DNA from: Octopus sinensis
Taxonomy: Eukaryota
DNA: 36,930 bases
Reading direction: 5' to 3'
Assembly: GCF_006345805.1 (NCBI RefSeq)
Contig: NW_021824711.1
Span: 1 to 36,930, forward strand
In this document: positions 967-29,522 of the stretch, in pieces
How positions within the stretch are numbered: the first letter of the stretch is position 1
How the letters are laid out: each line of letters starts with the position of its first letter
The notes under the pieces: model-generated
Databases searched by the model: none
The model's input: the letters and a program-made list of their open reading frames with translations, nothing else
Told to the model about the DNA's origin: nothing
Position numbers and translations under genes: made by a program

Positions 967-1091
967 TTAGCAAGAGTTGGGACATCATATCCAGCATCAA
1001 TTTTTGATTTTCCAGCAGCTACTGCACATGTCAGAATGAGTGGTGTCTGCCCTGTTTCTGTTGCTTCTTTGTCAAATGCTGCTCGTAATTC
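967..1091 (-). CDS. GH18 chitinase catalytic-domain exon (third visible exon; gene continues off the left edge)
   Basis: Encodes ELRAAFDKEATETGQTPLILTCAVAAGKSKIDAGYDVPTLA(K), typical of the GH18 beta5-alpha5 region. Acceptor aataaacAG| before 1091 and donor AA|GTAAGC after 967. Phase 0 start matches the phase 0 end of exon 4488-4725. Confidence 0.93.
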
Positions 1092-4487: not shown

Positions 4488-4725
4488 CTTTACCCACTCA
4501 GCAAAATTAGCTTTGTCATTTGACTGTGGATATTCCCAGTCAATATCCAATCCATCGAATTTATGTTTTCTGAGATAAGTGATCGCCTGTGAAATAAAAG
4601 CCTTTCTGTTTCCTGGTGCAGAAGCTATGGCAGAAAAAGGCGAAGTACCCACATTATATCCACCTACAGTTAGAATAACCTTTAAACCAGGGTTAGTTTT
4701 CTTGAAATTAATCACTTGTTGGTAC
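4488..4725 (-). CDS. GH18 chitinase exon containing the catalytic DxxDxDxE motif
   Basis: Encodes (M)YQQVINFKKTNPGLKVILTVGGYNVGTSPFSAIASAPGNRKAFISQAITYLRKHKFDGLDIDWEYPQSNDKANFAEWVK. Acceptor tttttttcttctcAG| and donor AAG|GTAAGT. 238 nt; its first base completes the AT left by exon 8260-8446 to give ATG. Confidence 0.97.
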
Positions 4726-8259: not shown

Positions 8260-8446
8260 ATTCCTTCTCCACCATTTATAGAAAGATCACTGGTCTCCGT
8301 TGGAGCCAATGAATTACCAGTCAATTTTGCAAAAGCATAGTGGATGTGGGAGCAGAATGATGGGTCAATATTACTTGGTTTGAAACTGCCTTGTCCAGGT
8401 CTGTATTGGGCCCAGTTGGTGAAGTAGCAAATGCGCCGATAAGCTG
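8260..8446 (-). CDS. GH18 chitinase exon encoding the mature N-terminus
   Basis: Encodes (A)AYRRICYFTNWAQYRPGQGSFKPSNIDPSFCSHIHYAFAKLTGNSLAPTETSDLSINGGEG(M). Long polypyrimidine tract with tandem acceptor CAGCAG, phase 1 start, donor AT|GTGAGT. Confidence 0.96.
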
Positions 8447-8558
8447 CTGTTATGGTTGACATTAGAAAAAAAGAGAAGAAAGGAAAAGAAAACAATATTA
8501 CTTAAGCAGATGATGATATTGTAAGTAATAAAGAATTCACAATATTGTTAATGCTATC

Positions 8559-8969: not shown

Positions 8970-9235
8970 CTAGCCAGAAAACTGAAAAAGACACTGGAGC
9001 CTTCAGTCAAATGATCCGGGAGACTAAAAACAGTAAAGGTGACTTGACAGTGGTCTGGGTAGATTGGGAAAATGTGTATGAATCAGTTTCTCATGCCTTC
9101 ATATATGCAGCCCTAGGTCACTACCATATCCATCTGCACATCAAAGGAACAATCACCAGCTACTTTGGAGGAATCTAGTTGTGCTTCAAAATGGCCCACT
9201 TTACGACTTGGTGGCAAGACTTGGAGAAGAGAATT
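8970..9235 (+). mobile_element. Hero-like RLE non-LTR retrotransposon RT fragment
   Basis: FSQMIRETKNSKGDLTVVWVDWENVYESVSHAFIYAALGHYHI...FTTWWQDLEKRI resembles the Hero-type 'DLTVVWLDLANAYGSIPH' region. Contains a stop. Confidence 0.65.
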
Positions 9236-9689
9236 GGGATCTAGCTTTTTTCATTTGCAAAATATACATTTTTTAAAAGACAATGAAAAATCTGAAAATT
9301 GGTAGCCTTCTAGTCTCATTGCTTTGAATGTAGGATGTTGTGGGGGAAAAAAATGGAGAAAAATGTTACAGAGGTTTAAAAATCGAAAAAAATTGTATTT
9401 TTAGCCAATCGCGAGACAAATTTTCTGCATTTAGCGGAATGGTGTCGACTTTAAGGTTGTACCCTATGAAATTTAGAGTTTGGCGTCTGACCTGTTCATT
9501 TTGCAGATGAGGAAGACTAGATCCGGGAATTGTAACTGGCTTCACAATTTCTCCCCGTTCTTTTTATTGCAGAATGAACCTCCTAAAAACAGCTGCAGAT
9601 AAAGAAGTCCAAAGATCAACAATGGAGTCAGGCAGTCAACCACATCCACTAAGGATTTTGACGGACGGACGATCTTACAGTGATGATCA

Positions 9690-10720
9690 CAGCCCATATG
9701 GAGGCGGTGCATGATGCATTTCCAACGCCAACAAACCTGCACAGATGGGGTATGAAAGTGAATCAACTGTGTAGGCTTTGTAGAGAACGGGACACCCTGG
9801 CATATATCCTGGCAAGGTACAAAAGAGCACTTACCCAAAGGAGATATAAATTACGCCATGATAAGGTGTTGCAATACTCGCTCACTTCAACACATAGTAA
9901 CCTGGGCTAGAATGAAGTCTTAGCCTCAGAAATCTAGAAGTAAGGCGATATGAAATGGTAAATGAACGAACGAGATCAAGCTGCAAGTACAAGGAGAGGC
10001 TATTCCGTCAATTGAAGAAAATGTGATCAAATGCCTTGGGAATCGGTTTAACAATTCATTCTATGACAAGCAAAGTCAATAATTCTGAAAAGTAGACAGA
10101 GGAGTGACTGAGAAAGATTGAAAGACCGGGACTTCCAGGAAAATTCAGGGCATTGTTCTACCAACACGAACTGCTTCCAAGCACTCGAGTTCAGGGTGCA
10201 AGTGATTAGTCATCACTTCCGTCGCACAGGCTGAAAACATGCAGAAGGTATGCAACGCCGTTGGAATTACATGCACAGAACGACAGGATTTCGAGTTTTC
10301 CCGTTTCCAACAATGGAAGAAGGCAGATACCAAGGAAAGGAGGACTATGTTCCAGGCAGATGTACTCCACCAGAAAGCCTGGATTCAAAGGAAACTCCTT
10401 AAAAGGAAGATCACGTGGACAGACCCGTAGAGACTAGAGCCTTTCCACATCTCCTTCTTGCCGCGGGCGGTGTATGATGCACTTCCAGCGCCAGTAAACC
10501 TGCACAGATGGGCTATGAAAGTTAACCAACTGTGTAGGATTTGTAGAGAACGAGACACCCTGGCATATATCCTGGCGGGGTACAAAAGAGCACTTACCCA
10601 AGAAGATACAAATTACGCCATGACATGGTGTTGCAACACTCGCTCACACTCTGGAACAGGAAAGACACAAAAAAGTGCCACGTACTCTGCCTCGGACTGC
10701 GTTTGATCCAGAACAACAGT
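9690..10720 (+). mobile_element. Hero-like RLE element C-terminal fragments; the CCHC region is present twice
   Basis: KIERPGLPGKF and AVYDALPAPVNLHRWAMKVNQLCRICRERDTLAYILAGYKRALTQ. About 9699-9885 repeats about 10465-10650. Confidence 0.65.
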
Positions 10721-13700
10721 CTTATCAAGGAGGCAAGCTGCGGAAGTCGCGTCTAACAAACGACTACAACACCTGCTCACCATCAACGAAATTCTGGAGA
10801 TATCGTAGCCTCAGCACATGTCTGGACATCATTATCACAGCACGCTCAGTCCATGCAGTGGATGTTGACAGCAAATGGACCGTCTGAGCGGCAAAACACG
10901 TCCCCTCCACAAAAAGCGCTCCATTCCAGTCACCTATGAAACAAGGTAAGATAAAAAATTCCACCTTTTGCAGTAGTAACTCAAAGAAGGGAAGAAAAGG
11001 AGCATCCTTGACGGACACAACACAAGCTATTGAACGGTTCCGATGGGCAGCAGAAGATGATAGATTCGGTGTAGGTATTTACTACCTCCACTCGATCCTT
11101 CAGGGATAGTTTTTATTCGTCTCATTTCTGGGTGAAATTAGCAACCTTACTCGTCACTTCTCTCCACATTTTGTCCACATGGAGGTCTGGACCAAACCGT
11201 ATCTTGAGCAATGTAACCGTTCGTCTGTCCAATACCTCACAACGCTGTTGGATAGTAAGGACCTGGCTCTCCTTGTACCGAGCGGCAGGCCCAACGACTT
11301 CTGAATAATTGTTACTCTTCTCACACCTCGTATTGCCCTAGAGTAATGTCAATCACCTTGATGTATTTGTTGTCCGACACTGTTACAGTGATATCTTCCG
11401 CATATGCGAACATGGATCTTCTGCATTCTACCTCTCGCAGGATGCCCCTCAAAAACCACCATCTACTACAGCAACGGCTCTAGAGTTAGTACGTACAGAA
11501 GAGGATTAAGGGTCACCTTGACACACCGAACGCATAATACTGAAGGTTCCGACTGGTGGCCTTTACTCTGATCACCAAACAAATGTTGTCGTATGTTGCA
11601 GCGATCCAACAATAGAAGACGGACACAAAACCAGCCTCCTCCAGAACAGCTGCTAAGTAAAGATAGTTGACCCTATCGAAATCTTTCAACTTAACTAAAC
11701 TGATCATGATTCCATCCATGCTAGGTTCTTTACCTACTATTTCTATAAAGTATCACATGAGGTTGAGGTTGTGGATTGATCTGCATAGTATAGTACAGAG
11801 TATAGATAAGCGTTAACCTCTCAGTTAGCACTGTTCCAAAATTTTAAACTCTACATTTAACAGAGTTACAGATGTAGACTTGTTAAAAATTATCCCCTTG
11901 TTTTGGTCCTTACTCAGCACCGCCACCACCACACCTCTTTTCACAAGACTAGCATTCTGTTGCCAGTTGCACTAGACATATGCCAAGGTGCTCCCGCACA
12001 AGTCTGGCATATGAAGATAAGTTCGTAGGGCAGAAAAACCACTCCCGGCGACTTCGCTCTCGTGCAGCCACTCATCGCTTCCTGTATTTCGTTAGCTGTT
12101 ATCAACCCTTTACAGGATTCCGCGTCCCTAGACGAGAACTGCTGCCGGCCGTCGAGGTGGGCAATAAAATCCACCCGGGGCTTCGGTCCACCAACAAATA
12201 GTTGAGCAAAGTGCCTCTGAAAAGCCCACATATCTGCTTAAAATCGAGCAGCACGTACCCCTGCCGATCTGTCAAAGACCGAATTGTGATTTGTTGCTTC
12301 GTTGTACCTCTACTGCCAAAGCCCATCGAACAGCTTTTGTTTCCTCATGTCTTAGGGCACGCACCCTAGCTCCAACAAGGCAACCTTTGTGCTTAACGTT
12401 GAAGAATCATTCAAGAGCCAATCTCGCCGGCAGGCTTCGGTCGCAATGCCTTTACTAAGTACCTCTTCTAGATTACTAATTAGCTCTCCCTCTACTCTGG
12501 AAATCTCATTCTCTATTTTCTAACAAACCTAATCGATTCAAATCTACTAGCCATTTTCAGGACTAGACACCATCGGCTGTTGACGATTGTCCCTGTCAAC
12601 TTCCTCATAAATAATTCTCCTACCCGGTCTCCGTAAACTTGGCGCGTTGGGAAAAAAACAAATTTTGTTTCCAGGGCCTCTGTCTATGCAGCCTCACTAT
12701 CAACCGTACAGATCACACATTTGCTATCTTTGTAGCCAACAACTTTGAAATGTGAACATGGCGCAGGAGTGGCTGTGTGGTAAGTAGCTTGTTTACCAAC
12801 CGCATGGTTCCGGGTTCAGTCCCACTGCGTGGCACCTTGGGTAAGTGTCTTCTACTATAGCCTCGGGCCGACCAAAGCCTTGTGAGTGGATTTGGTAGAC
12901 GGAAACTGAAAGAAGCCTGTCGTATATATGTATATATATGTATATGTATGTGTATGTTTGTGTGTCTGTGTTTGTCCCCCTAGCATTGCTTGACAACCGA
13001 TGCTGGTGTGTTTACGTCTCCGTTACTTAGCGGTTCGGCAAAAGAGACCGATAGAATAAGTACTGGGCTTACAAAGAATAAGTCCCGGGGTCGATTTGCT
13101 CGACTAAAGGCGGTGCTCCAGCATAGCCGCAGTCAAATGACTGAAACAAGTAAAAGAGTAAAAGGGTAAAGAGTAAAGAGAAAGTAACCTATGCTACCCT
13201 TATCTATTGGCTTCTACCTAAAAACCTTCTGGATGATCTGGGGCTGTTTCCCCATGTCCACATTGGCACATTCGGAAAACCCAGTCGGTACCTGTCAGTC
13301 AGCTGGAAACGACTGAACAGTTTGCGAAACTTTTACACCTCCCTCTCCTATCAGCTAGCCTCATACAATCTAGTCATGCATCCAAAACGGTGTTCTAATC
13401 GCCTACTAGCACTAAAAAGCGGGATGTTTCCAGAAAATCTCCAGACGCCTAATGAAATTTAGGTGTCCCTGTCCCGTCGAGACATACACAAGGACTAGTC
13501 TAAATCATGACGTTCGCTTCTGTTGATGCGTAGGATCACCAACTTACCATTTGGATCAAAGAAGATCGACTAAATCATGAGACCCAGGCCTTTCCAAACT
13601 ACCGCCACTCCACCACTAGTTCTTACAGAGTAAGACATGCGAAGATCTCAAAATCGCCAAAGATAGGTGCTAAGGTACGTGTGTCGGAAATCCAGGTTTC

Positions 13701-14100
13701 GTCGATAGCTGTCACACCAAATCTAGCAACCTAAGGTCATTAAGCAGGCGACCCTACTTCCACTGTGACCACATTATATACCCCTCTCTCAAAGTTGTTA
13801 TATTGGTAGAAAGAGAAAGAGGAGTAAAACAAACGAGCTATTTACCTACTTGGTGGTCTCGAAGACCGAGTGACACAGTCACATAGGGACTTTGAGTTTC
13901 CTTTGGAAAGTCTTTTTGGAGCTTACTGCTGGCCCTTGAGCTTAGACTTCTCACATGATTAGGAAATTCTCCCTCAATATTTTGTCTCCAAATTCAACCG
14001 TAACCATAATACTGTAACATTTTTGGCACCTTGAAAGTGCTGGTCCTGAAGACCTTTCACTCTGTTTCAATGTTTTCCTTTTTTCGACGAAGGACATTAG
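10720..14100 (-). mobile_element. Long decayed L1/Tx1-type LINE (APE endonuclease plus RT), interrupted by a SINE
   Basis: Minus-strand remnants: APE motifs (AIDETWISD, LVLVGD) near 13400-13760, EIQEAMSGCTRAKSPG near 12050, DFDRVNYLYLAAVLEEAGF near 11650, degenerate YADD (AYAEDIT) near 11400. Many stops and frameshifts; the right boundary is approximate. Confidence 0.75.
12760..13183 (+). mobile_element. Full-length tRNA-derived SINE nested in the Tx1-like LINE
   Basis: Same head, body and (gtaaaaga) tail as 5206-5630. Confidence 0.9.
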
Positions 14101-15540
14101 TTTGGGGCTTTTTTTTTATTAGCGCTCATTGTCAGCACAGAGTTTGGAGTGGGTATGTTTTACTGATGTTTTGTGTGTCAGTTTGATAATACTGTTCCTC
14201 TGTGTGTTTTGCTTTTTTGAGGTAGTTGGGGGTGAAGTTGTATATTTGTCTGTGTTTGTGTAGATGTGGTTTCTGAGATCTCGCTGTTTCAAAAATGGCG
14301 CTGGCTTCTTTGTGCCTCGCCACCACGGCATATCTATTATTCTGTATACATGACTCACACACAGACACAGATATTAACATTTCAATAAATCTTCTCTTAA
14401 TCATTCTACGCGGTTGTGCCTCCTTTCCCCTCTGGCACTTACATGTACTATTCAAATTATATATTTATTGCAAGGACTGTGATGTACTAAGGAGCCATTC
14501 TCATCACCTCGCTTCGCACGGTCCTTACACCACCAAGCGTTTTGGCATTTTGTCAGGTATTCTAGACTCTATTTTTTGGGTGACTTTCGAGACTATTTGG
14601 GTCTCCACTTAACCCGAATGCGTGTAGCATAGAGAACTCTACTAAAAAAAAACCTAAGGGCCAGATGGTGGTGTTAACCAAGCGAGGAATTAATACAGCC
14701 AATCAATAACTCGGGACGCAAAATACCGGAATAGAAGCCGTAATGGATATCATTAATGATTCTATCAATTCATTCCTTAAACTAATGTTTTATTTTATTG
14801 ACCCCGAAAGAATAAAAGGTACAGTTGACTTCGGCAGTTGAACTCAGAGTGAAGAGAGGTGGAACAAATACTGCAGGATATTTCGTCCAATGTACTTTAG
14901 GGATTTAAACCCCAACTGTGAAATTATCAAAAAAGTTTCACGCGAACAACCTAAAAATCGACCAGTCAACTTGAAGGTATGCCATGAACAGCATTTCGAA
15001 TGTTCTTGAGATTCGTGCTCTGTTTCCCTAGTCAAATATATGCAACCATCCTGATCTCACATTTAATTTTAGTACTACTACTCACAACATCACCCTTCTT
15101 ACGCTAACTCCACCTCGCATAAGGATGACCTCTACGACGAAGGAGGCCTACAAACAAACACGAAAACCACGTGATAGCGCTACGTCTTTGTGCCAATTCG
15201 CTACCGAAAGCAGTTTGTAGAAATAATACTCCACCGTTTAATATCAACAGGTAACATTGCCTTATTATTAGGAACTACGTTGTACAGGTGGGTAAAGGTG
15301 AAATTCATACAGTGGAAACCAGTGCCCTGTCCAGAGAGAAAAAAAACGAATCGCAAATTGCAGCCGCGAATCTGTGACACACGAGTACATAGCTTAATGC
15401 TATCTTCTTGGTCATTTCACGGTTACACTAATATGAATGGGAAAAATTCTGGATGATAGAAAGACTGGTTTCATGGGGAGGTTCTGATTTAAACACAGCA
15501 AAGAAATATGGTTTCATGGAAGTTTTATGCTAAAACTTGG

Positions 15541-15589
<49 letters not shown>

Positions 15590-15590
<1 letters not shown>

Positions 15591-16737
15591 GATGTTTAAA
15601 TACCAATACCATAGATTGTACAGTTTTATGATAGATTTAGTCTACTGCCAAGGTAGACCAACAAGCAATTTGAACTCAGAGCAGGTCTGAACAAATATCA
15701 CAAGACACAACTACACACCAAGTCCATTCTCTAACATTTTTTTTACCAGTTCACTGCCTTAACTGATATTATGTTTATCGACTCTGGAAAATTAAGGCCA
15801 TGCCTGATCTTGGTGGGGTTCAAACACAAAATGCAAGATGCTGGAATGAATGTTACAAAGCATTTTATTTGATGCCCAAACAACTCTTCTACTTCACTAG
15901 TTCCTTTGTGTCTAAAGTGCTAGCCTTATACCGAAATTGGAAACAATAAATTACAATATAAACTAAATGAATACATGATTTAAAACAATGTCATTCATAA
16001 AAGATCTGCAAGTTCCAGTCTTACCGTCTCCTGGTGTCTGTGTCTGAGCTGGAGGTTCAGGGGTTATGACATCCGGCGCACCTGAAATGAAGAGTATATC
16101 AAGTTAATTTTGTCCCCATGAAAGACACAACATGGCAAATCTAAACGAATCGTTAAATTTATAATTTTTATTTGAATAAAAGAAACTTTATAATTTATGT
16201 TATTATATTTATAATGTATGCTTTTGTGTATTGAGCATTGTTCTTGTGTGTGTGTGTGTGTGTGTGCGTGTGTGTACATGTTTCTCTTGCATGTGTAATC
16301 TTGCATCTCGTATTAGCAAATACTCTTGTATCTCCTATTAGCAAATGAAATATCTGAATAATTAATACCAAAACTCTTTTCCAATCTCTTGTTTTGATAT
16401 GTAATTATTATTCTGCAATAAAATATATTCCATGCAGACCCCACCTCAAACAAATATGAGCAACTGAATAAGCAGATGAGCTTCAAGAGAACACACTTTG
16501 GATTATAACCTTATCTGCAATATATATATATATATATATACATATGGACACACACACACACACATGTATAAACAGACAGATAGATAGATAATTAAGTCTC
16601 ATAACTGCCAATTCATGTTACAAAACAGTTTCATGCTGAAGAACCTTTCAAGTGCAGAAATGTAAATTGTCAATCATTGGGCATCATTGATGGAAAGGTA
16701 TCTTTTGACTGGTGAAAACTTATTGGAAAACTATATC
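15590..16737. repeat. Segmental repeat copy A (internally deleted)
   Basis: Colinear with both ends of copies B and C (tgatgtttaaataccaataccatagattg ... ttattggaaaactatat) but lacks the central 1.74 kb. Confidence 0.9.
16025..16081 (-). CDS. Pro/Thr linker exon, copy A (57 nt, phase 1-1, in frame, orphaned)
   Basis: tttcAG|GT GCG CCG GAT GTC ATA ACC CCT GAA CCT CCA GCT CAG ACA CAG ACA CCA GGA GAC G|GTAAGA, encoding (G)APDVITPEPPAQTQTPGD. Use in transcripts is unproven. Confidence 0.5.
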
Positions 16738-17350
16738 AAATAAGCCACCCATAATTGGATACAACTCACCCAACAAAAACTCACTACTTGAATGGACCAT
16801 AAACAAAACTTGACTTAAACAGGATTCAAATAATCCAATCAGGTGGTGCTATTAAGTTAGACATGGCCTGGACCAATCTTTGGTCGAAACATATCTAAGT
16901 TTATCTAAGTTTATGATGTTTAAATACCAATACCATAGATTGTACAGTTGTATGATAGATTTAGTCTACTGCCAAGGTAGACCGACAAGCAATTTCAACT
17001 CAGAGCAGGTCTGAACAAATATCACAAGACACAATTACACACCAAGTCCCATTCTAACATTTTTTTTACCAGTTCACTGCCTTAAACTGATATTATGTTT
17101 ATTGACACTGGAAAAATTAAGGCCATGCCTGATCTTGGTGGGGTTCAAACACAAAATGTAAGATGCTGGAATGAATACTACAAAGCATTTTATTTGATGC
17201 CCAAACAACTCTTCTACTTCACTGAGATATTAGCAAGATTTGGGATGAGAGAGAATTTCAGAAGGGCTACAGCCCTAGAGCGGAACTGACCAAAATGTTT
17301 AGAAAAGGATACAGAGGGATGAGTTGGAGGTGTTATGTAATAGGTAGATG

Positions 17351-17565
17351 GCAGAAACATTAGCACGCCGGGCAAAATGCTTAGCGGTATTTCATCTGCG
17401 TGACGTTGTGAGTTCAAATTCCGCTCAGGTCAACTTTGCCTTTCATCCTTTCGGGGTCGATAAATTAAGTACCAGTTACGCACTGAGGTCGATGTAATCG
17501 ACTAAAATACCTATGTCTGTCCTTGTTTGTCCCCTCTGTGTTTAGCCCCTTGTGGGTAATAAAGA
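17351..17565 (+). mobile_element. 5'-truncated SINE specific to copy B, with a 12-bp TSD
   Basis: Flanked by aataggtagatg at 17339-17350 and 17566-17577; absent at the equivalent site in copy C (about 20915-20925). Confidence 0.85.
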
Positions 17566-18338
17566 AATAGGTAGATGTGAGCAAAAGCAGCCATTGTAGA
17601 AGGGTAGAAAATATAACAGTGAAAGGAAAGAGGTATGAGATGGAGGTGGTATCTAACTGGGTAGATGTGAGCAATGGAGACTGTTCTAGTAGTGACACAA
17701 ATAGTAGGAGTGAGGAGACAGAGAGAGATGAAATGGAGGTGGTGTGTAAATTGAGTAGATGTGAGAAACAGTGACTATCGTAGAAGTGGTCAAACTGTAA
17801 GAGGGAAAAGATAGAGAGAAGAGATGGAGGTGGAGGAAGAAGCTAGAGGTAAAGAACAGAGACTGTTGTGATAATGGTAAAAAAGGTAATATATATCAAA
17901 TATGTGGCCATATGCCCATATTATAAATTAATATTTCAGAAGTGGAAGGTGGCAAGCTGGCAGAATTATTAGCATGTTGGGCAAAATTCTTAGTGGCATT
18001 TTATCCATCTTCATACTCTGAATTCAAATTCCGCTGAAGTCAACTTTGCTTTTCATCCTTTTGTGGGGGTCAATAAAGAAGCACCAGTTGGGTTTTGAGG
18101 GTTGATATAATCAACATACCCCCTCTTCCAAAATTGCTAGCCTTGTGCCTAAATTTGAAATCAATATTTCAGAAGTGGTGTAAGATGTTAGTTTGTGTCA
18201 CAACAGCAGCAAGATCTTATAGAACCAAAGAGTACACTATCATGAGTCTTGCTTGAACCATACTGGAATATTTAAAAGGTCCTTTCACAAAATAAATAAA
18301 TAAATAATAAAGATTGAAAAACAACAAAAAAAAGACAT

Positions 18339-18429: not shown

Positions 18430-18611
18430 TCAACATCCGGGCACTTCTGTAGAGAAGTCACAGTCTTTAATGGCTGTGCTGAAAGACGTTCCAGGAGGAC
18501 AGGGAAGTATTTGTTTACTTCCATTGGAGCATACCATATAGTTTTTGCAGTCTCCTGGGATTGCATGACCTCCTGGTGCCTTACCCACACAACTGGCACT
18601 AGACGACGCCC
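18430..18611 (-). CDS. Terminal chitin-binding (CBM14/ChtBD2) exon, copy B
   Basis: Acceptor tattctttctttcactatttAG|, phase 1. Encodes (G)ASSSASCVGKAPGGHAIPGDCKNYMVCSNGSKQILPCPPGTSFSTAIKDCDFSTEVPGC*, with six Cys in ChtBD2 spacing. Confidence 0.7.
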
Positions 18612-19317: not shown

Positions 19318-19381
19318 CGTCTCCTGGTGTTGGTGTCTGTGTCTGAGCTGGAGGTTCAGAGGTTACGACATCCGGCACAAC
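19318..19381 (-). pseudogene. Linker exon copy B, 64 nt, frameshifted
   Basis: Splice sites are intact, but one extra base (GTTGTGCCG vs GTGCGCCG) gives GT TGT GCC GGA TGT CGT AAC CTC TGA, a premature stop. Confidence 0.7.
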
Positions 19382-20318: not shown

Positions 20319-21762
20319 TATAGAGAGAGAGATAATTAAGTCTCATAACAGCCAATTCATGTTACAAAACAGTTTTATGCTGAAGAACCTTTCAACTGCA
20401 GAAATGTAAATTGTCAATCATTGGGCATGATTGATTGAAATGTATTTTTTGACTGGTGAAAACCTATTGGAATACTATATATATATATGATGTTTATATA
20501 CCAATACCATAGATTGTACAGTCGTATGATAGATTTAGTCTACTGCCAAGGTAGACCAACAAGCAATTTGAACTCAGAGCAGGTCTGAACAAATATCACA
20601 AGACACAACTACACACCAAGTCCCATTCTGACATTTCTTTTACCAGTTCACTGCCTTAAACTGATATTATGTTTATCGACTCTGGAAAAATTAAGGCCAT
20701 GCCTGATCTTGGTGGGGTTCAAACACAAAGTGTAAGATGCTGGAATGAATGTTACAAAGCATTTTATTTGATGCTCAAACAACTCTTCTACTTCACTGAG
20801 ATATTAGCAGAATTTGGCATGAGAGAGAATTTCAGAAGGGCTATAGCCCTAGAGCAGAACTGACCAAAATGTTTAGAAAAGGATACAGAGGGATGAGGTG
20901 GAGGTGGTATGTAAAAAGGTAGATTTGAGCAACAGCAACCATTGTAGAAGGGTAGAAAATATAACAGTGAAAGGAAAGAGGTATGAGATGGAGGTGGTAT
21001 CTAACTGGGTAGATGTGAGCAATGGAGACTGTTCTAGTAGTGACACAAATAGTAGGAGTGAGGAGACAGAGAGAGATGAAATGGAGGTGGTGTGTAAATT
21101 GAGTAGATGTGAGAAACAGTGACTATCGTAGAAGTGGTCAAACTGTAAGAGGGAAAAGATAGAGAGAGGAGATGGAGGTGGAGGAAGAAGCTAGAGGTAA
21201 AGAACAGAGACTGTTGTAGTAGTGGTAGAAAAGGTAATATATATCAAATATGTGGCCATATGCCCATATTATAAATTAATATTTCAGAAGTGGAAGGTGG
21301 CAAGCTGGCAGAATTATTAGCATGTTGGGCAAAATTCTTAGTGGCATTTCATTCTTCTTCACACTCTGAGTTCAAATTCCGCTGAAGTCGACTTTGCTTT
21401 TCATCCTTTTGTGGGGGTCAATAAAGAAGCACCAGTTGGGTTTTGAGGGTTGATATAATCAACATACCCCCTCTTCCAAAATTGCTGACCTTGTGCCTAA
21501 ATTTGAAATCAATATTTCAGAAGTGGTGTCACAACAGCAGCAAGATCTTATAGAACCGAAGAGTACACTATCATGAGTCTTGCTTGAACCATACTGGAAT
21601 ATTTAAAATGGTCCTTTCACAAAATAAATAAATAAATAATAAAGATTGAAAAACAACAAAAAAAAAGACATTTTATTTCTTAGCAATTTTCTTTATTTTT
21701 CAATTAAATTCAGTTTCGGTAATTTTTTTCTTTTCATTTAGTATCTTAATAGCAAAGAAACT

Positions 21763-21944
21763 TCAACATCCGGGCACTTCTGTAGAGAAGTCACAGTTTT
21801 TAATGGCTGTGCTGAAAGACGTTCCAGGAGGACAGGGAAGTATTTGTTTATTTCCATTGGAGCATACCATATAGTTTTTGCAGTCTCCTGGGATTGCATA
21901 GCTTCCTGGTGCCTTACCCACACAACTGGTACTAGACGACGCCC
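21763..21944 (-). CDS. Terminal chitin-binding (CBM14/ChtBD2) exon, copy C
   Basis: Phase 1 acceptor ctatttAG|. Encodes (G)ASSSTSCVGKAPGSYAIPGDCKNYMVCSNGNKQILPCPPGTSFSTAIKNCDFSTEVPGC*. AATAAA about 70 nt downstream (21692-21697). Confidence 0.88.
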
Positions 21945-22661
21945 CTAAATAGTGAAAGAAAGAATACATGTGTATATGTGAGTGTGTGAGTGTACACACA
22001 TATGTATATATGTACATACGTATGTATGTATGTACATATATCACTAACAGAGATATGAGTTGGGTGGTTTGGTCGGATCCAGTGAGCCACAGAATTGCAT
22101 CGCATTCTATGTCAGCTTTAGCATGATTTTTACAACCGGATACCCTTCATAATATCAACCACTTTACCGTGTACACCTGATGTTTGTTTTCATTCCACCA
22201 GCACTAGTGGGGTTACCCAGTAACTTGAAAGACAGGAAAGGACAAAAAAAGATAGAAAAACAGGAGAGAAGCGAAAGGCCTTCTTGACTGAGTGGTGGTG
22301 ATGTTTGAGAAGGAGGAGATGAGATTTTTATGCCAGGGAGAAGCAGGTGTCTTGTCGTAGACAAGATACACAGCTGCCCTGCATTTATATATGGGTAAGT
22401 GGGAGTATCTAGACTAAAGGTCAGATGAGAGTCATCAGATGTCAGTGCAAAAACTAAGGTCAACTTTGTTTTCCCTCCGACACCAGGGTCAATAAAATAA
22501 AACACAGTTTAGTAATAGGGCCAATGTAATTAACTAGTTCGTTTGTGTCTAAAGTGCTAGCCTTATACCTAAACTGGAAACAATAAATTGCAATATAAAC
22601 TAAATGAATACATGAATTAAAACAATGTCGTTCATAAAAGATCTGCAAGTTCCAGTCTTAC

Positions 22662-22724
22662 CGTCTCCTGGTGTTGGTGTCTGTGTCTGAGCTGGAGGTT
22701 CAGAGGTTACGACATCCGGCGCAC
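22662..22724 (-). CDS. Pro/Thr linker exon, copy C (63 nt, phase 1-1)
   Basis: tttcAG|...|GTAAGA. Encodes (G)APDVVTSEPPAQTQTPTPGD(G) and splices in frame to the CBM14 exon at 21944. Confidence 0.8.
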
Positions 22725-25857: not shown

Positions 25858-25874
25858 CTGTTGATGAAGATGAC
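25858..25874 (-). CDS. Candidate 17-nt micro-exon encoding SSSST(G)
   Basis: cgtatttcttttcttcatttatgcAG|G TCA TCT TCA TCA ACA G|GTGAGA. Its phase 1 end matches the linker exon's phase 1 start. Confidence 0.55.
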
Positions 25875-27417: not shown

Positions 27418-29241
27418 TCATCATCATCATCATCATCGTTTAACGTCCGCTTTCCATGCTAGCATGGGTTGGACGATTTTGACTGAGGGCTGGTGAACCA
27501 GATGGCTGCACCAGACTCCAGTCTTGATCTGGCAGAGGTTCTACAGCTGGATGCCCTTCCTAACACTAACCACTCCGAGAGTGTAGTGGGTTCTTTTTAC
27601 ATGCCACCGGCATAGAAGCCAGTTAGCCACTCTGGCAACGATCACGCTCAGATGGTGCTCTTGGCACCCTACTAACATGGGCACAAGTGCCAGTAAGGTG
27701 ACGCTGGAAATGATCACTCGAACGGTGCCTTTTATATGCCACTGGCACAGAAGTCGGTTAGCCACTCTGTCAACGATCCCATTCGTATAGTGCTCTTTGC
27801 ACCCCGCTAGCATGGATGCCAGTCATCAAATTTGATTTTGATTTCACTTGCCTCAACAGGTCTTCGCAAGCAGAGTTTAGTGTCCAAAAAAGGAAAAGGT
27901 ACGCATTAGTGGGCTGGTTACGCTCCTGGCATAGGCCACGGGTTATGGTCTCATTTGGCTTGCCGGGTCTTCTCAAGCACAGCATATTTCCAAAAGTCTT
28001 GGTCACTAGTCATTGCCTCGGTGAGGCCTAATGTTCGAAGATCGTGCTTCACCACTTCATCCCAGGTCTTCCTGGATCTACCTCTTCCACAGGTTCCCTC
28101 AACCACTAGGGTGTGGCTCTTTTTCACACAGCTATCCTCATCCATTCTCACCACATGGCCATACCAGTGCAGTTGTCTCTCTTGCACACCACATCTGATG
28201 CTTCTTAGGTCCAACTTTTCTCTCAAGGTACTTACCCTCTGTCAAGTATGCGCACTGACATTACACATCCATCAGATCATACTGGCTTCATTCCTTGTGA
28301 GCTTACGCATGTCCTCAGCAGTCACAGCCCATGCTTCACTGCCATGTAGCATGGCTGTTCGCACACATGCGTCATACAGTCTACTTTTTACTCTGAGCAA
28401 GAGGCCCTTTATCACCAGCAGAGGTAAGAGCTCTCTGAACTTTGCCCAAGCTATTCTTATTCTAGCAGCTACACTTTCAGCGCACCCTCCCCCGCTACTG
28501 ACTTGGTCACCTATGTAACGGAAGCTTTCAACTATTTCTAGTTTTTCTCCCTGGAATGTGGCGCAAGTTGTTCTCTGCACATTTTCAGTGTTTATTGCTC
28601 CCGAGCATCTACCACATACAAAAACTATCTTCCCAGTAAGTCTTCCTTTGATATTACTGCACCTCTTATGTGTCCATAGCTTACACTGGGTACATCTTAT
28701 AGAGTTTCTACCTACGCCTCTACTACAGATTGAGCAGGGCCATCTACCTGAAGGGATTTGTGGTTTGCCTGCCTTCCTACTTATTAGGACTTTAGTTTTA
28801 GCTAGGTTGATTCTAAGGCCCTTCAATTCTAATCCTTGTTTCCACACTTGAAACTTCTCCTCTAGTTCTGATAGTGACTCAGCAATTAGAGCAAAGTCAT
28901 CAGCATAGAGGAGCTCCCAGGGGGATCCTATCTTGAATTCCTCCATTATTGCCTGGCCGACTATGTTAAATACAAGGGAGCTGAGGACTGAACTTTGGTG
29001 GACCCCTACATCTACCCTAAATTCTTCAGTGTACTCGTTGCCAACCCTCACCTTGCAGATAGAATCCCTGTACATGGCTTGCACAGCTTTCACTAACCAT
29101 TCATCTTTCCCTAGTTTCCTCATTGACCACCAGATAAGGGATCGGGGGACCCTGTCAAAGGCTTTCTCCATGTCAATGAAAGCCAGGTACAGGGGCTTAT
29201 CTTTGGCTAGGTATTTCTCCTGCAGCTGTCTTACCACAAAT
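27418..29241 (-). mobile_element. 5'-truncated RTE-clade LINE with a long open RT frame
   Basis: About 320 uninterrupted codons (29241-28272) with LAFIDMEKAFDRVPR, GVHQSSVLS and ELLYADD. A frameshifted C-terminus (QERQLHWYGHVVRMDE) follows, then a 3' UTR and (ATG)n tail. Confidence 0.92.
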
Positions 29242-29369
29242 ATATATATATATGCACACACACACACAATACACACACTCTCACACACACACACGCATGC
29301 ATACACACACATACACACACATACGCGCACACATGCACACACACACACACACACACACATGATGAGCCT

Positions 29370-29522
29370 CCTCAGCTCCCAACCACCAAATCCATTCACG
29401 AGGCTTTGTCGGCCTGGTGCTATAACAAAAGACATTTGCACCCAAGGTGCCACACAGCGGGACTGAACATGGAACCATGCCATTAGGAACCAAACTTCTT
29501 ACCACACAATCACACCTATGCC
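29370..29522 (-). mobile_element. tRNA-SINE 5' portion
   Basis: Reverse complement of the SINE head (ccaaggtgccacacagcgggactgaacatggaaccatg). Confidence 0.7.

What the first reader, a model, noticed from the sequence alone, without database searches (positions are those of the whole stretch)
15896..16081. Microhomology deletion orphaned linker A and left it in phase with the downstream chitinase (possible GH18-linker-GH18 fusion)
Seen: copy A reads ctacttcACTagttcc, joining the cttcACTgag site (20795-20797 in copy C) to the taACTagttc site (22533-22535). This 1738-nt deletion at a 3-bp microhomology removes the CBM14 exon and its polyA signals. Linker A stays open, with intact AG and GTAAGA sites. 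The next recognisable acceptor downstream is the phase 1 GH18 exon at 8446, which would give ...TQTPGD-AAYRRICYFTNW in frame. Inference: a route to a two-catalytic-domain chitinase, resembling multi-GH18 chitinases of arthropods, built from neighbouring genes.
Basis: partly seen in the sequence, partly recalled or inferred. Interest (0 to 1): 0.7.

Follow-up and report, generated by a model that had tools for sequence, protein, structure and literature searches.

The report
Octopus chitinase linker exon, duplication junction
The "orphaned" linker is an old, conserved spacer exon of the octopus GH18-CBM14 chitinase gene, and the "downstream chitinase" is the front part of that same gene placed behind it by a head-to-tail junction on this unplaced scaffold. 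A two-enzyme fusion is therefore possible on paper, but no transcript or gene model supports it.

Summary
The sequence observations are all correct: the ACT junction, the 1738-nt loss of the CBM14 exon, the intact linker exon at 16081-16025, and the in-frame phase-1 fit to the acceptor at 8446. The interpretation needs revising.

The window is a whole 36,930-bp unplaced Octopus sinensis scaffold. Copies C, B and A are the linker/CBM14 unit array at the 3' end of the chitinase gene annotated as "acidic mammalian chitinase". On the chromosome this gene has five phase 1-1 linker cassette exons and four alternative CBM14 terminal exons (isoforms X1-X7).

The exact deletion junction of copy A is also present in the O. 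vulgaris chromosome. There the exon is followed by the next linker unit, so the deletion is old and the exon is a normal cassette.

The "downstream gene" is intron 1 plus exons 2-4 of the same gene (99.5% identical). It lacks the promoter and signal-peptide exon and is joined to A's (TA)n tail at 15539-15543. This is either a roughly 47-kb intragenic tandem duplication or an assembly chimera.

If the duplication is real, GH18-linker-GH18 splicing is mechanistically plausible. No protein or gene model shows it. Multi-GH18 chitinases are already known in molluscs. Interest is modest.

The parts
25858..25874 (-). 17-nt micro-exon (G-SSSST-G). It converts the phase-2 end of the last GH18 exon to phase 1. 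Skipping it gives the truncated ...ELGCAGCRNL* isoforms.
   Evidence: Pattern search found it at the same place in the window and at L001:61150-61166, with AG and GTGAGA flanks.
22662..22724 (-). Linker cassette exon of unit C, equal to chromosomal L1 (APDVVTSEPPAQTQTPTPGD). 63 nt, phase 1-1.
   Evidence: 100% match to L1 of XP_029645874 and the other isoforms.
21763..21944 (-). CBM14 terminal exon of unit C (equal to CBMa), with stop codon. AATAAA hexamers at 21697 and 21677.
   Evidence: PF01607 E=4.5e-14. Identical to the C-terminus of isoform X6. Poly(A) hexamers.
19318..19381 (-). Linker exon of unit B (equal to L2, VPDVV...). Here it is 64 nt, one T too many after the acceptor. Spliced from a phase-1 donor it reads GCAGCRNL*.
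   Evidence: Comparison of all 12 linker exons from the window, O. sinensis and O. vulgaris. Translation.
18430..18611 (-). CBM14 terminal exon of unit B. It is a mosaic of CBMc/d-like and CBMb-like residues.
   Evidence: PF01607 E=6.2e-13. tblastn.
17349..17573 (.). SINE-like repeat insert in the tail of unit B. It is absent from the O. sinensis chromosome copy and present in O. vulgaris. The 98.8% collinear block ends here.
16025..16081 (-). Linker cassette exon A (APDVITPEPPAQTQTPGD). 57 nt, phase 1-1, with intact AG and GTAAGA. It is the orthologue of O. vulgaris L3.
   Evidence: It differs from O. vulgaris L3 only by one in-frame ACACCA unit.
15896..15898 (.). Deletion junction with 3-bp microhomology (ACT on the plus strand, AGT on the minus strand). 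1738 nt are missing relative to unit C.
   Evidence: The same 20-mer, AAAGGAACTAGTGAAGTAGA, is at L002:72056 in O. vulgaris and absent from L001 and L003.
15565..16736 (-). Unit A as a whole: unit head, linker exon and unit tail, with no CBM14.
   Evidence: Self-BLAST and MAFFT. Collinear with O. vulgaris unit 3 within one 4.6-kb HSP at 95.4%.
15539..15589 (.). The (TA)n tail of unit A (15589-15542) joined to the middle of intron 1 of the same gene (CAAGTTTTAGC..., equal to L001:22512). This is a head-to-tail rearrangement junction with TAT(C) microhomology.
   Evidence: Neither sequence has N gaps.
13846..14007 (-). Homologue of an alternative first exon (MVTVEFGDKILRENF...) annotated in O. 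vulgaris isoform CAI9735678. Its donor is phase 1. The reading frame is broken on this scaffold.
   Evidence: tblastn. Donor phase in L001.
8260..8446 (-). GH18 exon 2 (AAYRRICYFTNW...). It has the canonical phase-1 acceptor that normally receives the signal-peptide exon.
   Evidence: 100% identical in protein to the chromosomal gene.
4488..4725 (-). GH18 exon 3, with the catalytic motif FDGLDIDWEYP.
967..1091 (-). GH18 exon 4. The gene then runs off the low end of the scaffold.

Best explanation
Shown:
- The window is an entire unplaced Octopus sinensis scaffold.
- Units C, B and A are the tandem [Pro/Thr-rich linker exon + CBM14 terminal exon] array at the 3' end of the secreted GH18-CBM14 chitinase gene. 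A cloned octopus chitinase cDNA (BAX02570.1) falls in the same 90% cluster.
- In the annotated isoforms, the linker exons are symmetric phase 1-1 cassettes strung together in series (1 to 5 of them), ending in any of several alternative CBM14 exons.
- Linker A is the third such cassette. Its CBM14 was lost by a 1.7-kb deletion before O. sinensis and O. vulgaris split. In the intact O. vulgaris gene the next exon after it is another linker exon.
- About 350 bp past the deletion junction, A's (TA)n tail is joined head-to-tail to the middle of intron 1 of the same gene. Exons 2-4 therefore follow, without the promoter or signal-peptide exon.

Inferred (most likely):
- This is the novel junction of a roughly 47-kb intragenic tandem duplication (L001 22512-69922, equal to CM016873.1:51,167,052-51,214,462). 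It is carried on the other haplotype or collapsed in the chromosome assembly.

Inferred (weaker):
- On such an allele, any transcript that reads through the CBM14 poly(A) sites, as the longer annotated isoforms do, would splice linker A to exon 2. That would encode signal peptide-GH18-linkers-GH18-...
- The frame fit follows from the all-phase-1 design and is not a product of the deletion.
For: Scaffold identity:
- XP_029653829.2 lies on a contig of exactly 36,930 bp.

Gene architecture:
- Isoforms X1-X7 differ by 21-aa linker modules and by their CBM14 ends.
- These map to five linker exons and four CBM14 exons in L001. L4 has no CBM14 after it.

Age of the deletion:
- The identical 20-nt junction is at L002:72056.
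- Window 20134-15541 is collinear with O. vulgaris 67840-72423.
- Linker A matches O. vulgaris L3.
- O. bimaculoides has a single unit and no such junction.

Permuted collinearity:
- Window 36930-17565 matches L001 50123-69448 at 98.8%.
- Window 15543-1 matches L001 22509-38037 at 99.5%.
- The junction sequence has TAT(C) microhomology and no N gaps.

Against a random chimera:
- Both blocks come from one 70-kb gene, in the same orientation.
- The centre of the scaffold carries real haplotype-type differences that follow the O. vulgaris structure: unit A, the SINE insert, and substitutions clustered near the junction.

Splicing logic:
- The signal-peptide, alternative-first-exon and linker donors are all phase 1, and the exon-2 acceptor is phase 1.
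- No annotated isoform uses an acceptor inside intron 1.
Against: - The junction is seen only on this one unplaced scaffold. It is absent from the O. sinensis chromosome (L001) and the O. vulgaris chromosome (L002), and I could not inspect reads or depth.
- The join lies at a (TA)n microsatellite, a place where assemblies can go wrong.
- The scaffold has about 0.2% single-base indels against the chromosome, so its consensus is imperfect.
- No database protein or gene model contains linker followed by AAYRR.
- NCBI annotated only a 189-aa fragment here.
- Linker B is frameshifted on this scaffold.
- An AATAAA hexamer remains 156 nt downstream of A's donor, at 15869.
- An alternative first exon lies in the duplicated part of intron 1.
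Confidence: 0.55

Rival explanations
1. Assembly chimera. The scaffold is a leftover haplotig in which sequence from the 3' unit array, ending in A's (TA)n tract, was falsely joined to sequence from intron 1 of the same gene. Biologically, linker A is followed by the next linker unit, as in O. vulgaris, and there is no second GH18 exon set behind it.
For: - The junction is absent from both chromosome-level assemblies.
- The join lies at a 48-bp (TA)n tract, and intron 1 has its own (TA)n about 80 bp upstream of the breakpoint.
- The scaffold was left unplaced and has many 1-nt indels.
Against: - A ligation chimera would rarely join two pieces of the same 70-kb gene in the same orientation.
- The 80 bp between intron 1's own (TA)n and the breakpoint are missing, so this is not a simple false overlap of TA tracts.
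- A shared tract under 100 bp is, to my knowledge, far below the overlap length long-read assemblers require.
- The scaffold's centre is real, distinct haplotype sequence.
Confidence: 0.35
2. Two independent neighbouring chitinase genes exist, and a recent microhomology-mediated deletion removed the upstream gene's CBM14 exon and poly(A) site, creating a read-through GH18-linker-GH18 conjoined gene.
For: The deletion, the intact splice sites and the in-frame join are real.
Against: - The deletion is shared with O. vulgaris, where the exon sits inside a normal single-GH18 gene.
- Two intact CBM14 terminal exons with poly(A) signals (units C and B) still lie upstream of A.
- The downstream exons are a promoterless copy of the same gene without a signal peptide.
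- No GH18 exon lies upstream of unit C anywhere in 23.8-36.9 kb of the window.
- 3-bp microhomology occurs by chance about 6% of the time.
Confidence: 0.03
3. The duplication is real but there is no fusion. Transcripts of the first copy end at the CBM14 exons of units C or B. The second partial copy is then either silent or transcribed from the alternative first exon inside intron 1 (window 14007-13846), giving a product without a signal peptide, or a non-coding RNA.
For: - Intact CBM14 exons with AATAAA signals lie upstream of A.
- An O. vulgaris isoform (CAI9735678) starts at this intronic exon and splices to the same exon-2 acceptor.
- No fusion product is in the databases.
Against: - Chromosomal isoforms X1-X5 and X7 show that read-through past CBMa and CBMb is modelled for this gene.
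- The alternative exon's frame is broken on this scaffold.
- It is annotated in only one species.
Confidence: 0.3

Closest known systems
Octopus sinensis 'acidic mammalian chitinase' gene on CM016873.1 (isoforms X1-X7, XP_029645868.1 and others), and the cloned octopus chitinase cDNA BAX02570.1
   Same: It is the same gene. Exons 2-4, the micro-exon, L1 and CBMa are identical in protein, and the DNA is 98.8-99.5% identical. It uses the same phase-1 cassette logic.
   Different: The chromosomal copy lacks unit A and the SINE insert. It continues from unit 2 into L3/CBMc/L4/L5/CBMd, not into intron 1.
Octopus vulgaris orthologue (OX597831.1), third linker unit
   Same: It has the same CBM14-less unit with the identical deletion junction, the same Ile-containing linker (APDVITPEPP...) and the same B-to-A spacer.
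   Different: In O. vulgaris the (TA)n tail leads into the next linker unit and CBMc. There is one GH18 exon set only. Its linker is 6 nt longer.
Multi-GH18 chitinases: arthropod group II / 'chitinase 10', scallop 'chitinase 3' and 'chitinase 10', and oyster Ca-Chit with two catalytic domains (PMC4457423)
   Same: They have several GH18 domains separated by linkers, often with CBM14. These proteins are the top-scoring relatives of the octopus catalytic exon. This is what the hypothetical fusion would resemble.
   Different: Those are established single genes with cloned or modelled products. Here only one and a half sets of GH18 exons are seen on a scaffold, and no product is known.
Vertebrate AMCase / chitotriosidase (GH18, hinge, CBM14)
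   Same: The domain order is the same, with a Pro/Thr/Ser-rich hinge and isoforms that lack the chitin-binding domain. NCBI names the octopus gene after AMCase.
   Different: To my knowledge they do not have a tandem array of alternative linker cassettes and CBM14 terminal exons. This was not tested here.

Membership tests
GH18 chitinase (PF00704) | Significant match to the Glyco_hydro_18 profile | tested here: met
   P0242 (the window's exons 2-4): E=9.4e-44, 150.8 bits against a cut-off of 29.6.
GH18 chitinase (PF00704) | Catalytic DxxDxDxE motif | tested here: met
   FDGLDIDWE is in exon 3, window 4725-4488.
GH18 chitinase (PF00704) | Complete catalytic domain present | tested here: not met
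   Only profile positions 1-171 of 317 lie on the scaffold. The gene runs off the low end.
CBM14 / peritrophin-A (PF01607) | Profile match with six conserved cysteines | tested here: met
   Units C and B: E=4.5e-14 and 6.2e-13, with full profile coverage 1-53. Unit A has no CBM14, because it was deleted.
Multi-GH18 (two-catalytic-domain) chitinase | Two GH18 domains in one expressed polypeptide | tested here: inconclusive
   The in-frame join exists on paper. No cluster representative of 103-329 aa or 350-1115 aa spans linker to AAYRR, and none of the 11 members of the octopus cluster does. RNA data could not be searched directly.
Conjoined / read-through fusion of neighbouring genes | Two independent genes, each with its own promoter and first exon | tested here: not met
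   The downstream exons are exons 2-4 of the same gene. The 5'UTR exon and signal-peptide exon (L001 about 10001 and 17009-17065) are absent from the window.
Tandem segmental (intragenic) duplication | Head-to-tail junction joining a distal point to a proximal point in the same orientation | tested here: met
   The block order is 50123-69448 followed by 22509-38037, both on the same strand.
Tandem segmental (intragenic) duplication | Independent support: spanning reads, doubled depth or PCR | not testable with these tools
   No read-level data were available. The junction is absent from L001 and L002.
Microhomology-mediated deletion | Shared bases at the breakpoint beyond chance expectation | tested here: inconclusive
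   3 bp (ACT) are shared. P(3 bp or more)=0.06 in 200,000 simulated deletions in unit C.
Symmetric (1-1) cassette exon | Length divisible by 3, same phase at both ends, used optionally in isoforms | tested here: met
   Linker A is 57 nt and the other linkers are 63 nt, all phase 1-1. Chromosomal isoforms carry 1, 2, 4 or 5 of them. Use of exon A itself in mRNA was not tested.

The most novel reading that the evidence does not exclude
A segregating (or assembly-collapsed) intragenic tandem duplication of about 47 kb in O. sinensis has placed a second, promoterless GH18 exon set behind the linker cassettes of the chitinase gene. The gene's existing phase-1 linker splicing would then produce a secreted GH18-linker-GH18-linker-CBM14 enzyme. 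This would be the birth of a two-catalytic-domain chitinase caught while still polymorphic.
Probability: 0.15. Interest if true: 0.6.

Novelty: new member of a known kind. Interest (0 to 1): 0.3.

Why it matters
As it stands, the result is mainly a correction. An apparent gene-fusion lesion turns out to be a conserved cassette exon next to a scaffold-level rearrangement.

Two things could be of modest value to specialists:
1. In the O. vulgaris/sinensis lineage the chitinase gene has expanded a single linker+CBM14 unit (as in O. bimaculoides) into an array of alternative linkers and chitin-binding ends. This would allow linker length and binding module to be varied combinatorially.
2. If the head-to-tail junction is real, it would be a concrete, testable example of how multi-GH18 chitinases arise by intragenic duplication of phase-compatible exons.

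Tried and rejected
- I looked for GH18 exons upstream of unit C (23.8-36.9 kb) by tblastn with 150 relatives, at E<1e-3 and at E<50. None was found.
- I screened the minus strand for a signal-peptide-like first exon with a phase-1 donor between 8447 and 15565. None was found. The real signal peptide (MTMKVCAILCLLLCISATD) is absent from the window.
- I considered that copy A might be a patchwork made by template switching during the rearrangement. I rejected this because O. vulgaris has the same unit and the same junction in a normal context.
- I considered that the window's junction could be simple recombination between two (TA)n tracts. That is unlikely because the 80 bp between intron 1's (TA)n and the breakpoint are missing.
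- I searched the 5.8-billion-protein database for a product spanning linker to AAYRR in two length classes. Nothing was found, but only cluster representatives are searched.
- A look-up of CAI9735677 as a separate gene failed. It is an isoform of the same O. vulgaris gene, not a tandem copy.
- I did not find the O. sinensis assembly paper in the library, so I could not establish the assembly method or how haplotigs were handled.

Full report
**1. Observation**

A has ...tctacttcACTagttcc... (15886-15902). C has cttcACTgag (20795-20797) and taACTagttc (22533-22535).

A self-BLAST and a three-way alignment show three head-to-tail units on the minus strand: C (23798-20476), B (20483-16889) and A (16736-15565). 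A lacks 1738 nt that B and C retain. The missing block holds the CBM14 terminal exon (C: 21944-21763; Pfam PF01607, E=4.5e-14) and the AATAAA hexamers just after its stop codon.

Linker exon A (16081-16025, 57 nt) keeps its AG acceptor and GTAAGA donor and is open. It is phase 1-1. The exon starting at 8446 is phase 1, and the join reads ...TQTPGDAAYRRICYFTNW.

Two caveats apply. Microhomology of 3 bp or more occurs in about 6% of simulated random deletions, so it says little about mechanism. The phase match is a general property of this gene, as shown below.

**2. What the window is**

An exhaustive search with the catalytic exon, followed by a word-indexed search, found Octopus sinensis 'acidic mammalian chitinase' isoforms at 98-100% identity. 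One cluster member, XP_029653829.2 (189 aa), lies on a contig of exactly 36,930 bp, which is this window. That model starts at an intronic ATG (MSTIT...) just upstream of the 8446 acceptor and has no signal peptide.

The same 90% cluster holds a cloned octopus chitinase cDNA (BAX02570.1). Octopus chitinase has been described from saliva and purified from the posterior salivary gland (cited in PMC4728518 and PMC4457423). Whether that purified enzyme is this gene's product was not tested.

**3. Architecture of the intact gene**

The chromosomal locus (L001, CM016873.1) was fetched and the isoforms mapped onto it. In order, it contains:
- a signal-peptide exon, then a 12.5-kb intron 1;
- GH18 exons 2-8;
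- a 17-nt micro-exon;
- L1/CBMa, L2/CBMb, L3, CBMc, L4, L5 and CBMd.

Isoforms X1-X7 (473, 494, 536 and 557 aa) differ by whole 21-aa linker modules and by which CBM14 exon ends them. In these models a linker donor routinely skips a CBM14 terminal exon and its poly(A) signals and splices to the next phase-1 acceptor. L4 on the chromosome has no CBM14 after it, so a linker without its own CBM14 is a normal component. All linker exons share near-identical acceptor and donor contexts.

The micro-exon (window 25874-25858) converts phase 2 to phase 1. Skipping it yields the annotated CBM-less isoforms ending in GCAGCRNL.

**4. Age and identity of copy A**

The O. vulgaris locus (L002) contains the identical 20-nt junction AAAGGAACTAGTGAAGTAGA at 72056. 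Window 20134-15541 (unit B plus unit A) is collinear with O. vulgaris 67840-72423 in one 4.6-kb alignment at 95.4%.

Linker A carries the same diagnostic Ile/Pro variant as O. vulgaris L3 and differs only by one in-frame ACACCA unit. In O. vulgaris the unit's tail runs through a long (TA)n into the next linker unit and CBMc. O. bimaculoides has a single linker+CBM14 unit and no such junction.

So the array expanded in the vulgaris/sinensis lineage, and unit 3 lost its CBM14 before those two species separated. The exon is a conserved cassette, not a freshly orphaned one. The O. sinensis chromosome copy lacks unit A and the SINE-like insert at 17349-17573. This is either an unequal-crossover polymorphism or an assembly collapse.

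**5. The 'downstream chitinase'**

Base-level comparison shows that the window consists of two blocks of the same gene in permuted order:
- window 36930-17565 matches L001 50123-69448 at 98.8%;
- window 15543-1 matches L001 22509-38037 at 99.5%.

The second block is the distal 7 kb of intron 1 plus exons 2-4. The promoter, the 5'UTR exon and the signal-peptide exon are not in the window. No GH18 exon lies upstream of unit C.

The join is A's (TA)n tract (15589-15542) followed by TC and then CAAGTTTTAGC (equal to L001:22512). It has TAT(C) microhomology and no N gaps. This is the signature of a tandem duplication of about 47 kb (CM016873.1:51,167,052-51,214,462) seen across its novel junction, or of a chimeric contig.

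**6. Real or artefact?**

In favour of a real variant:
- Both blocks come from one 70-kb gene in the same orientation, which a random ligation chimera would rarely produce.
- The 80 bp between intron 1's own (TA)n and the breakpoint are missing, so this is not a simple false overlap of TA tracts.
- The centre of the scaffold is real, distinct haplotype sequence that follows the O. vulgaris structure. Substitutions cluster within about 4 kb to the left and 2 kb to the right of the junction, while the outer flanks differ by only about 0.1%.

Against:
- The junction is on one unplaced scaffold only and is absent from both chromosome-level assemblies.
- It lies at a microsatellite.
- The scaffold shows about 0.2% single-base indels.

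I put a real duplication at roughly 55-60% and a chimera at about 35%.

**7. Would a fusion be made?**

If the junction is real, the logic is favourable.
- The exon-2 acceptor is the one that normally receives the phase-1 signal-peptide donor across a 12.5-kb intron, and no annotated isoform uses an acceptor inside intron 1.
- Linker donors are modelled to skip CBM14 exons.
- L_C + L_A + exon 2 reads ...PGDGAPDVITPEPPAQTQTPGDAAYRRICYFTNW... in frame. The residues from the junction Ala onward (AAYRR...) are the same as those that follow the signal-peptide exon in the native protein.

Several things count against it.
- Two intact CBM14 terminal exons with poly(A) signals precede A.
- Linker B on this scaffold has one extra T and would terminate the frame (GCAGCRNL*), although this may be a consensus error.
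- An AATAAA remains at 15869.
- A possible alternative first exon lies at 14007-13846.
- No database protein or gene model spans linker to AAYRR.

I estimate about 15% that such a two-domain protein is actually produced.

**8. Comparison with what is known**

The window's products are bona fide GH18 (PF00704, E=9.4e-44, catalytic FDGLDIDWE) and CBM14.

Multi-GH18 chitinases are common among the closest relatives. They include scallop 'chitinase 3' and 'chitinase 10', amphipod and dipteran 'chitinase 10', and nematode, tardigrade and priapulid proteins. An oyster chitinase with two catalytic domains has been cloned (PMC4457423). The architecture would therefore not be new. Only the possible observation of its origin by intragenic duplication of phase-compatible exons would be of interest.

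**9. Verdict**

- The feature is a conserved linker cassette exon of an annotated chitinase gene, lying next to a head-to-tail junction of uncertain reality.
- Interest is modest (0.3).
- Read-level validation of the junction and a search for splice-junction reads are the decisive tests.

Noticed in passing
window 19318-19381 (minus strand): Linker exon B is 64 nt, where every other copy in O. sinensis and O. vulgaris is 63 nt. One T is lost in the polypyrimidine tract and one T is gained after the acceptor. Spliced from a phase-1 donor it reads GCAGCRNL*. It may be a consensus error, because the scaffold has about 0.2% 1-nt indels.
   Followed up: partly
window 25858-25874 (minus strand); L001:61150-61166: A 17-nt micro-exon (SSSST) acts as a frame switch. 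With it, the linker and CBM14 are in frame. Without it, the protein ends in GCAGCRNL and lacks the chitin-binding domain, as in the annotated isoforms of O. vulgaris and O. bimaculoides.
   Followed up: partly
L001:69448-69971 compared with window 17573-15541 and L002:70400-72423: The O. sinensis chromosome copy lacks unit A and a SINE-like insert, both of which the scaffold and O. vulgaris have. This is either unequal crossover between unit tails or an assembly collapse.
   Followed up: partly
window 13846-14007 (minus strand); L001:24028-24189; L002:24293-24454: An alternative first exon lies inside intron 1 (MVTVE[L/F]GDKILRENF...). It is used by O. vulgaris isoform CAI9735678 and gives an N-terminus different from the signal-peptide one. 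Its frame is broken on the scaffold.
   Followed up: partly
window 8447-8461 (minus strand): NCBI's protein model for this scaffold (XP_029653829.2) begins at an ATG inside the intron (MSTIT) just upstream of the exon-2 acceptor. This is an artefact of the missing signal-peptide exon.
   Followed up: yes
L003 (O. bimaculoides CM046618.1): This species has only one linker+CBM14 unit and a compact 17-kb gene. The unit array is therefore an expansion specific to the vulgaris/sinensis lineage. A convergent second GH18 gene lies just downstream in both O. bimaculoides and O. sinensis.
   Followed up: partly
window 18430-18611 (minus strand): The CBM14 exon of unit B is a mosaic. Its N-terminal residues (SSSASCVGKAPGGHAIPGD) match CBMc/d and its C-terminal part matches CBMb, which suggests gene conversion between units.
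   Followed up: no
window 28272-29483 (minus strand), and 9000-13200: There is a reverse-transcriptase ORF (PF00078, E=1.6e-16) inside the large intron. Retroelement-like ORF fragments and duplicated segments also lie in the intron-1 portion (not checked against Pfam). Many microsatellites are present, with (TA)n at every unit boundary.
   Followed up: partly
P0003 (Argonauta hians, partial model): This annotated partial protein has one full GH18 domain joined directly to exon-3-like sequence of a second GH18. It could be a gene-model merge or another cephalopod tandem arrangement.
   Followed up: no
window about 20900-13500: Substitutions relative to the chromosome copy cluster around the rearrangement junction: 68 of 86 in the last 4 kb of block 1, and 14 of 22 in the first 2 kb of block 2. 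The outer flanks are about 99.9% identical.
   Followed up: partly
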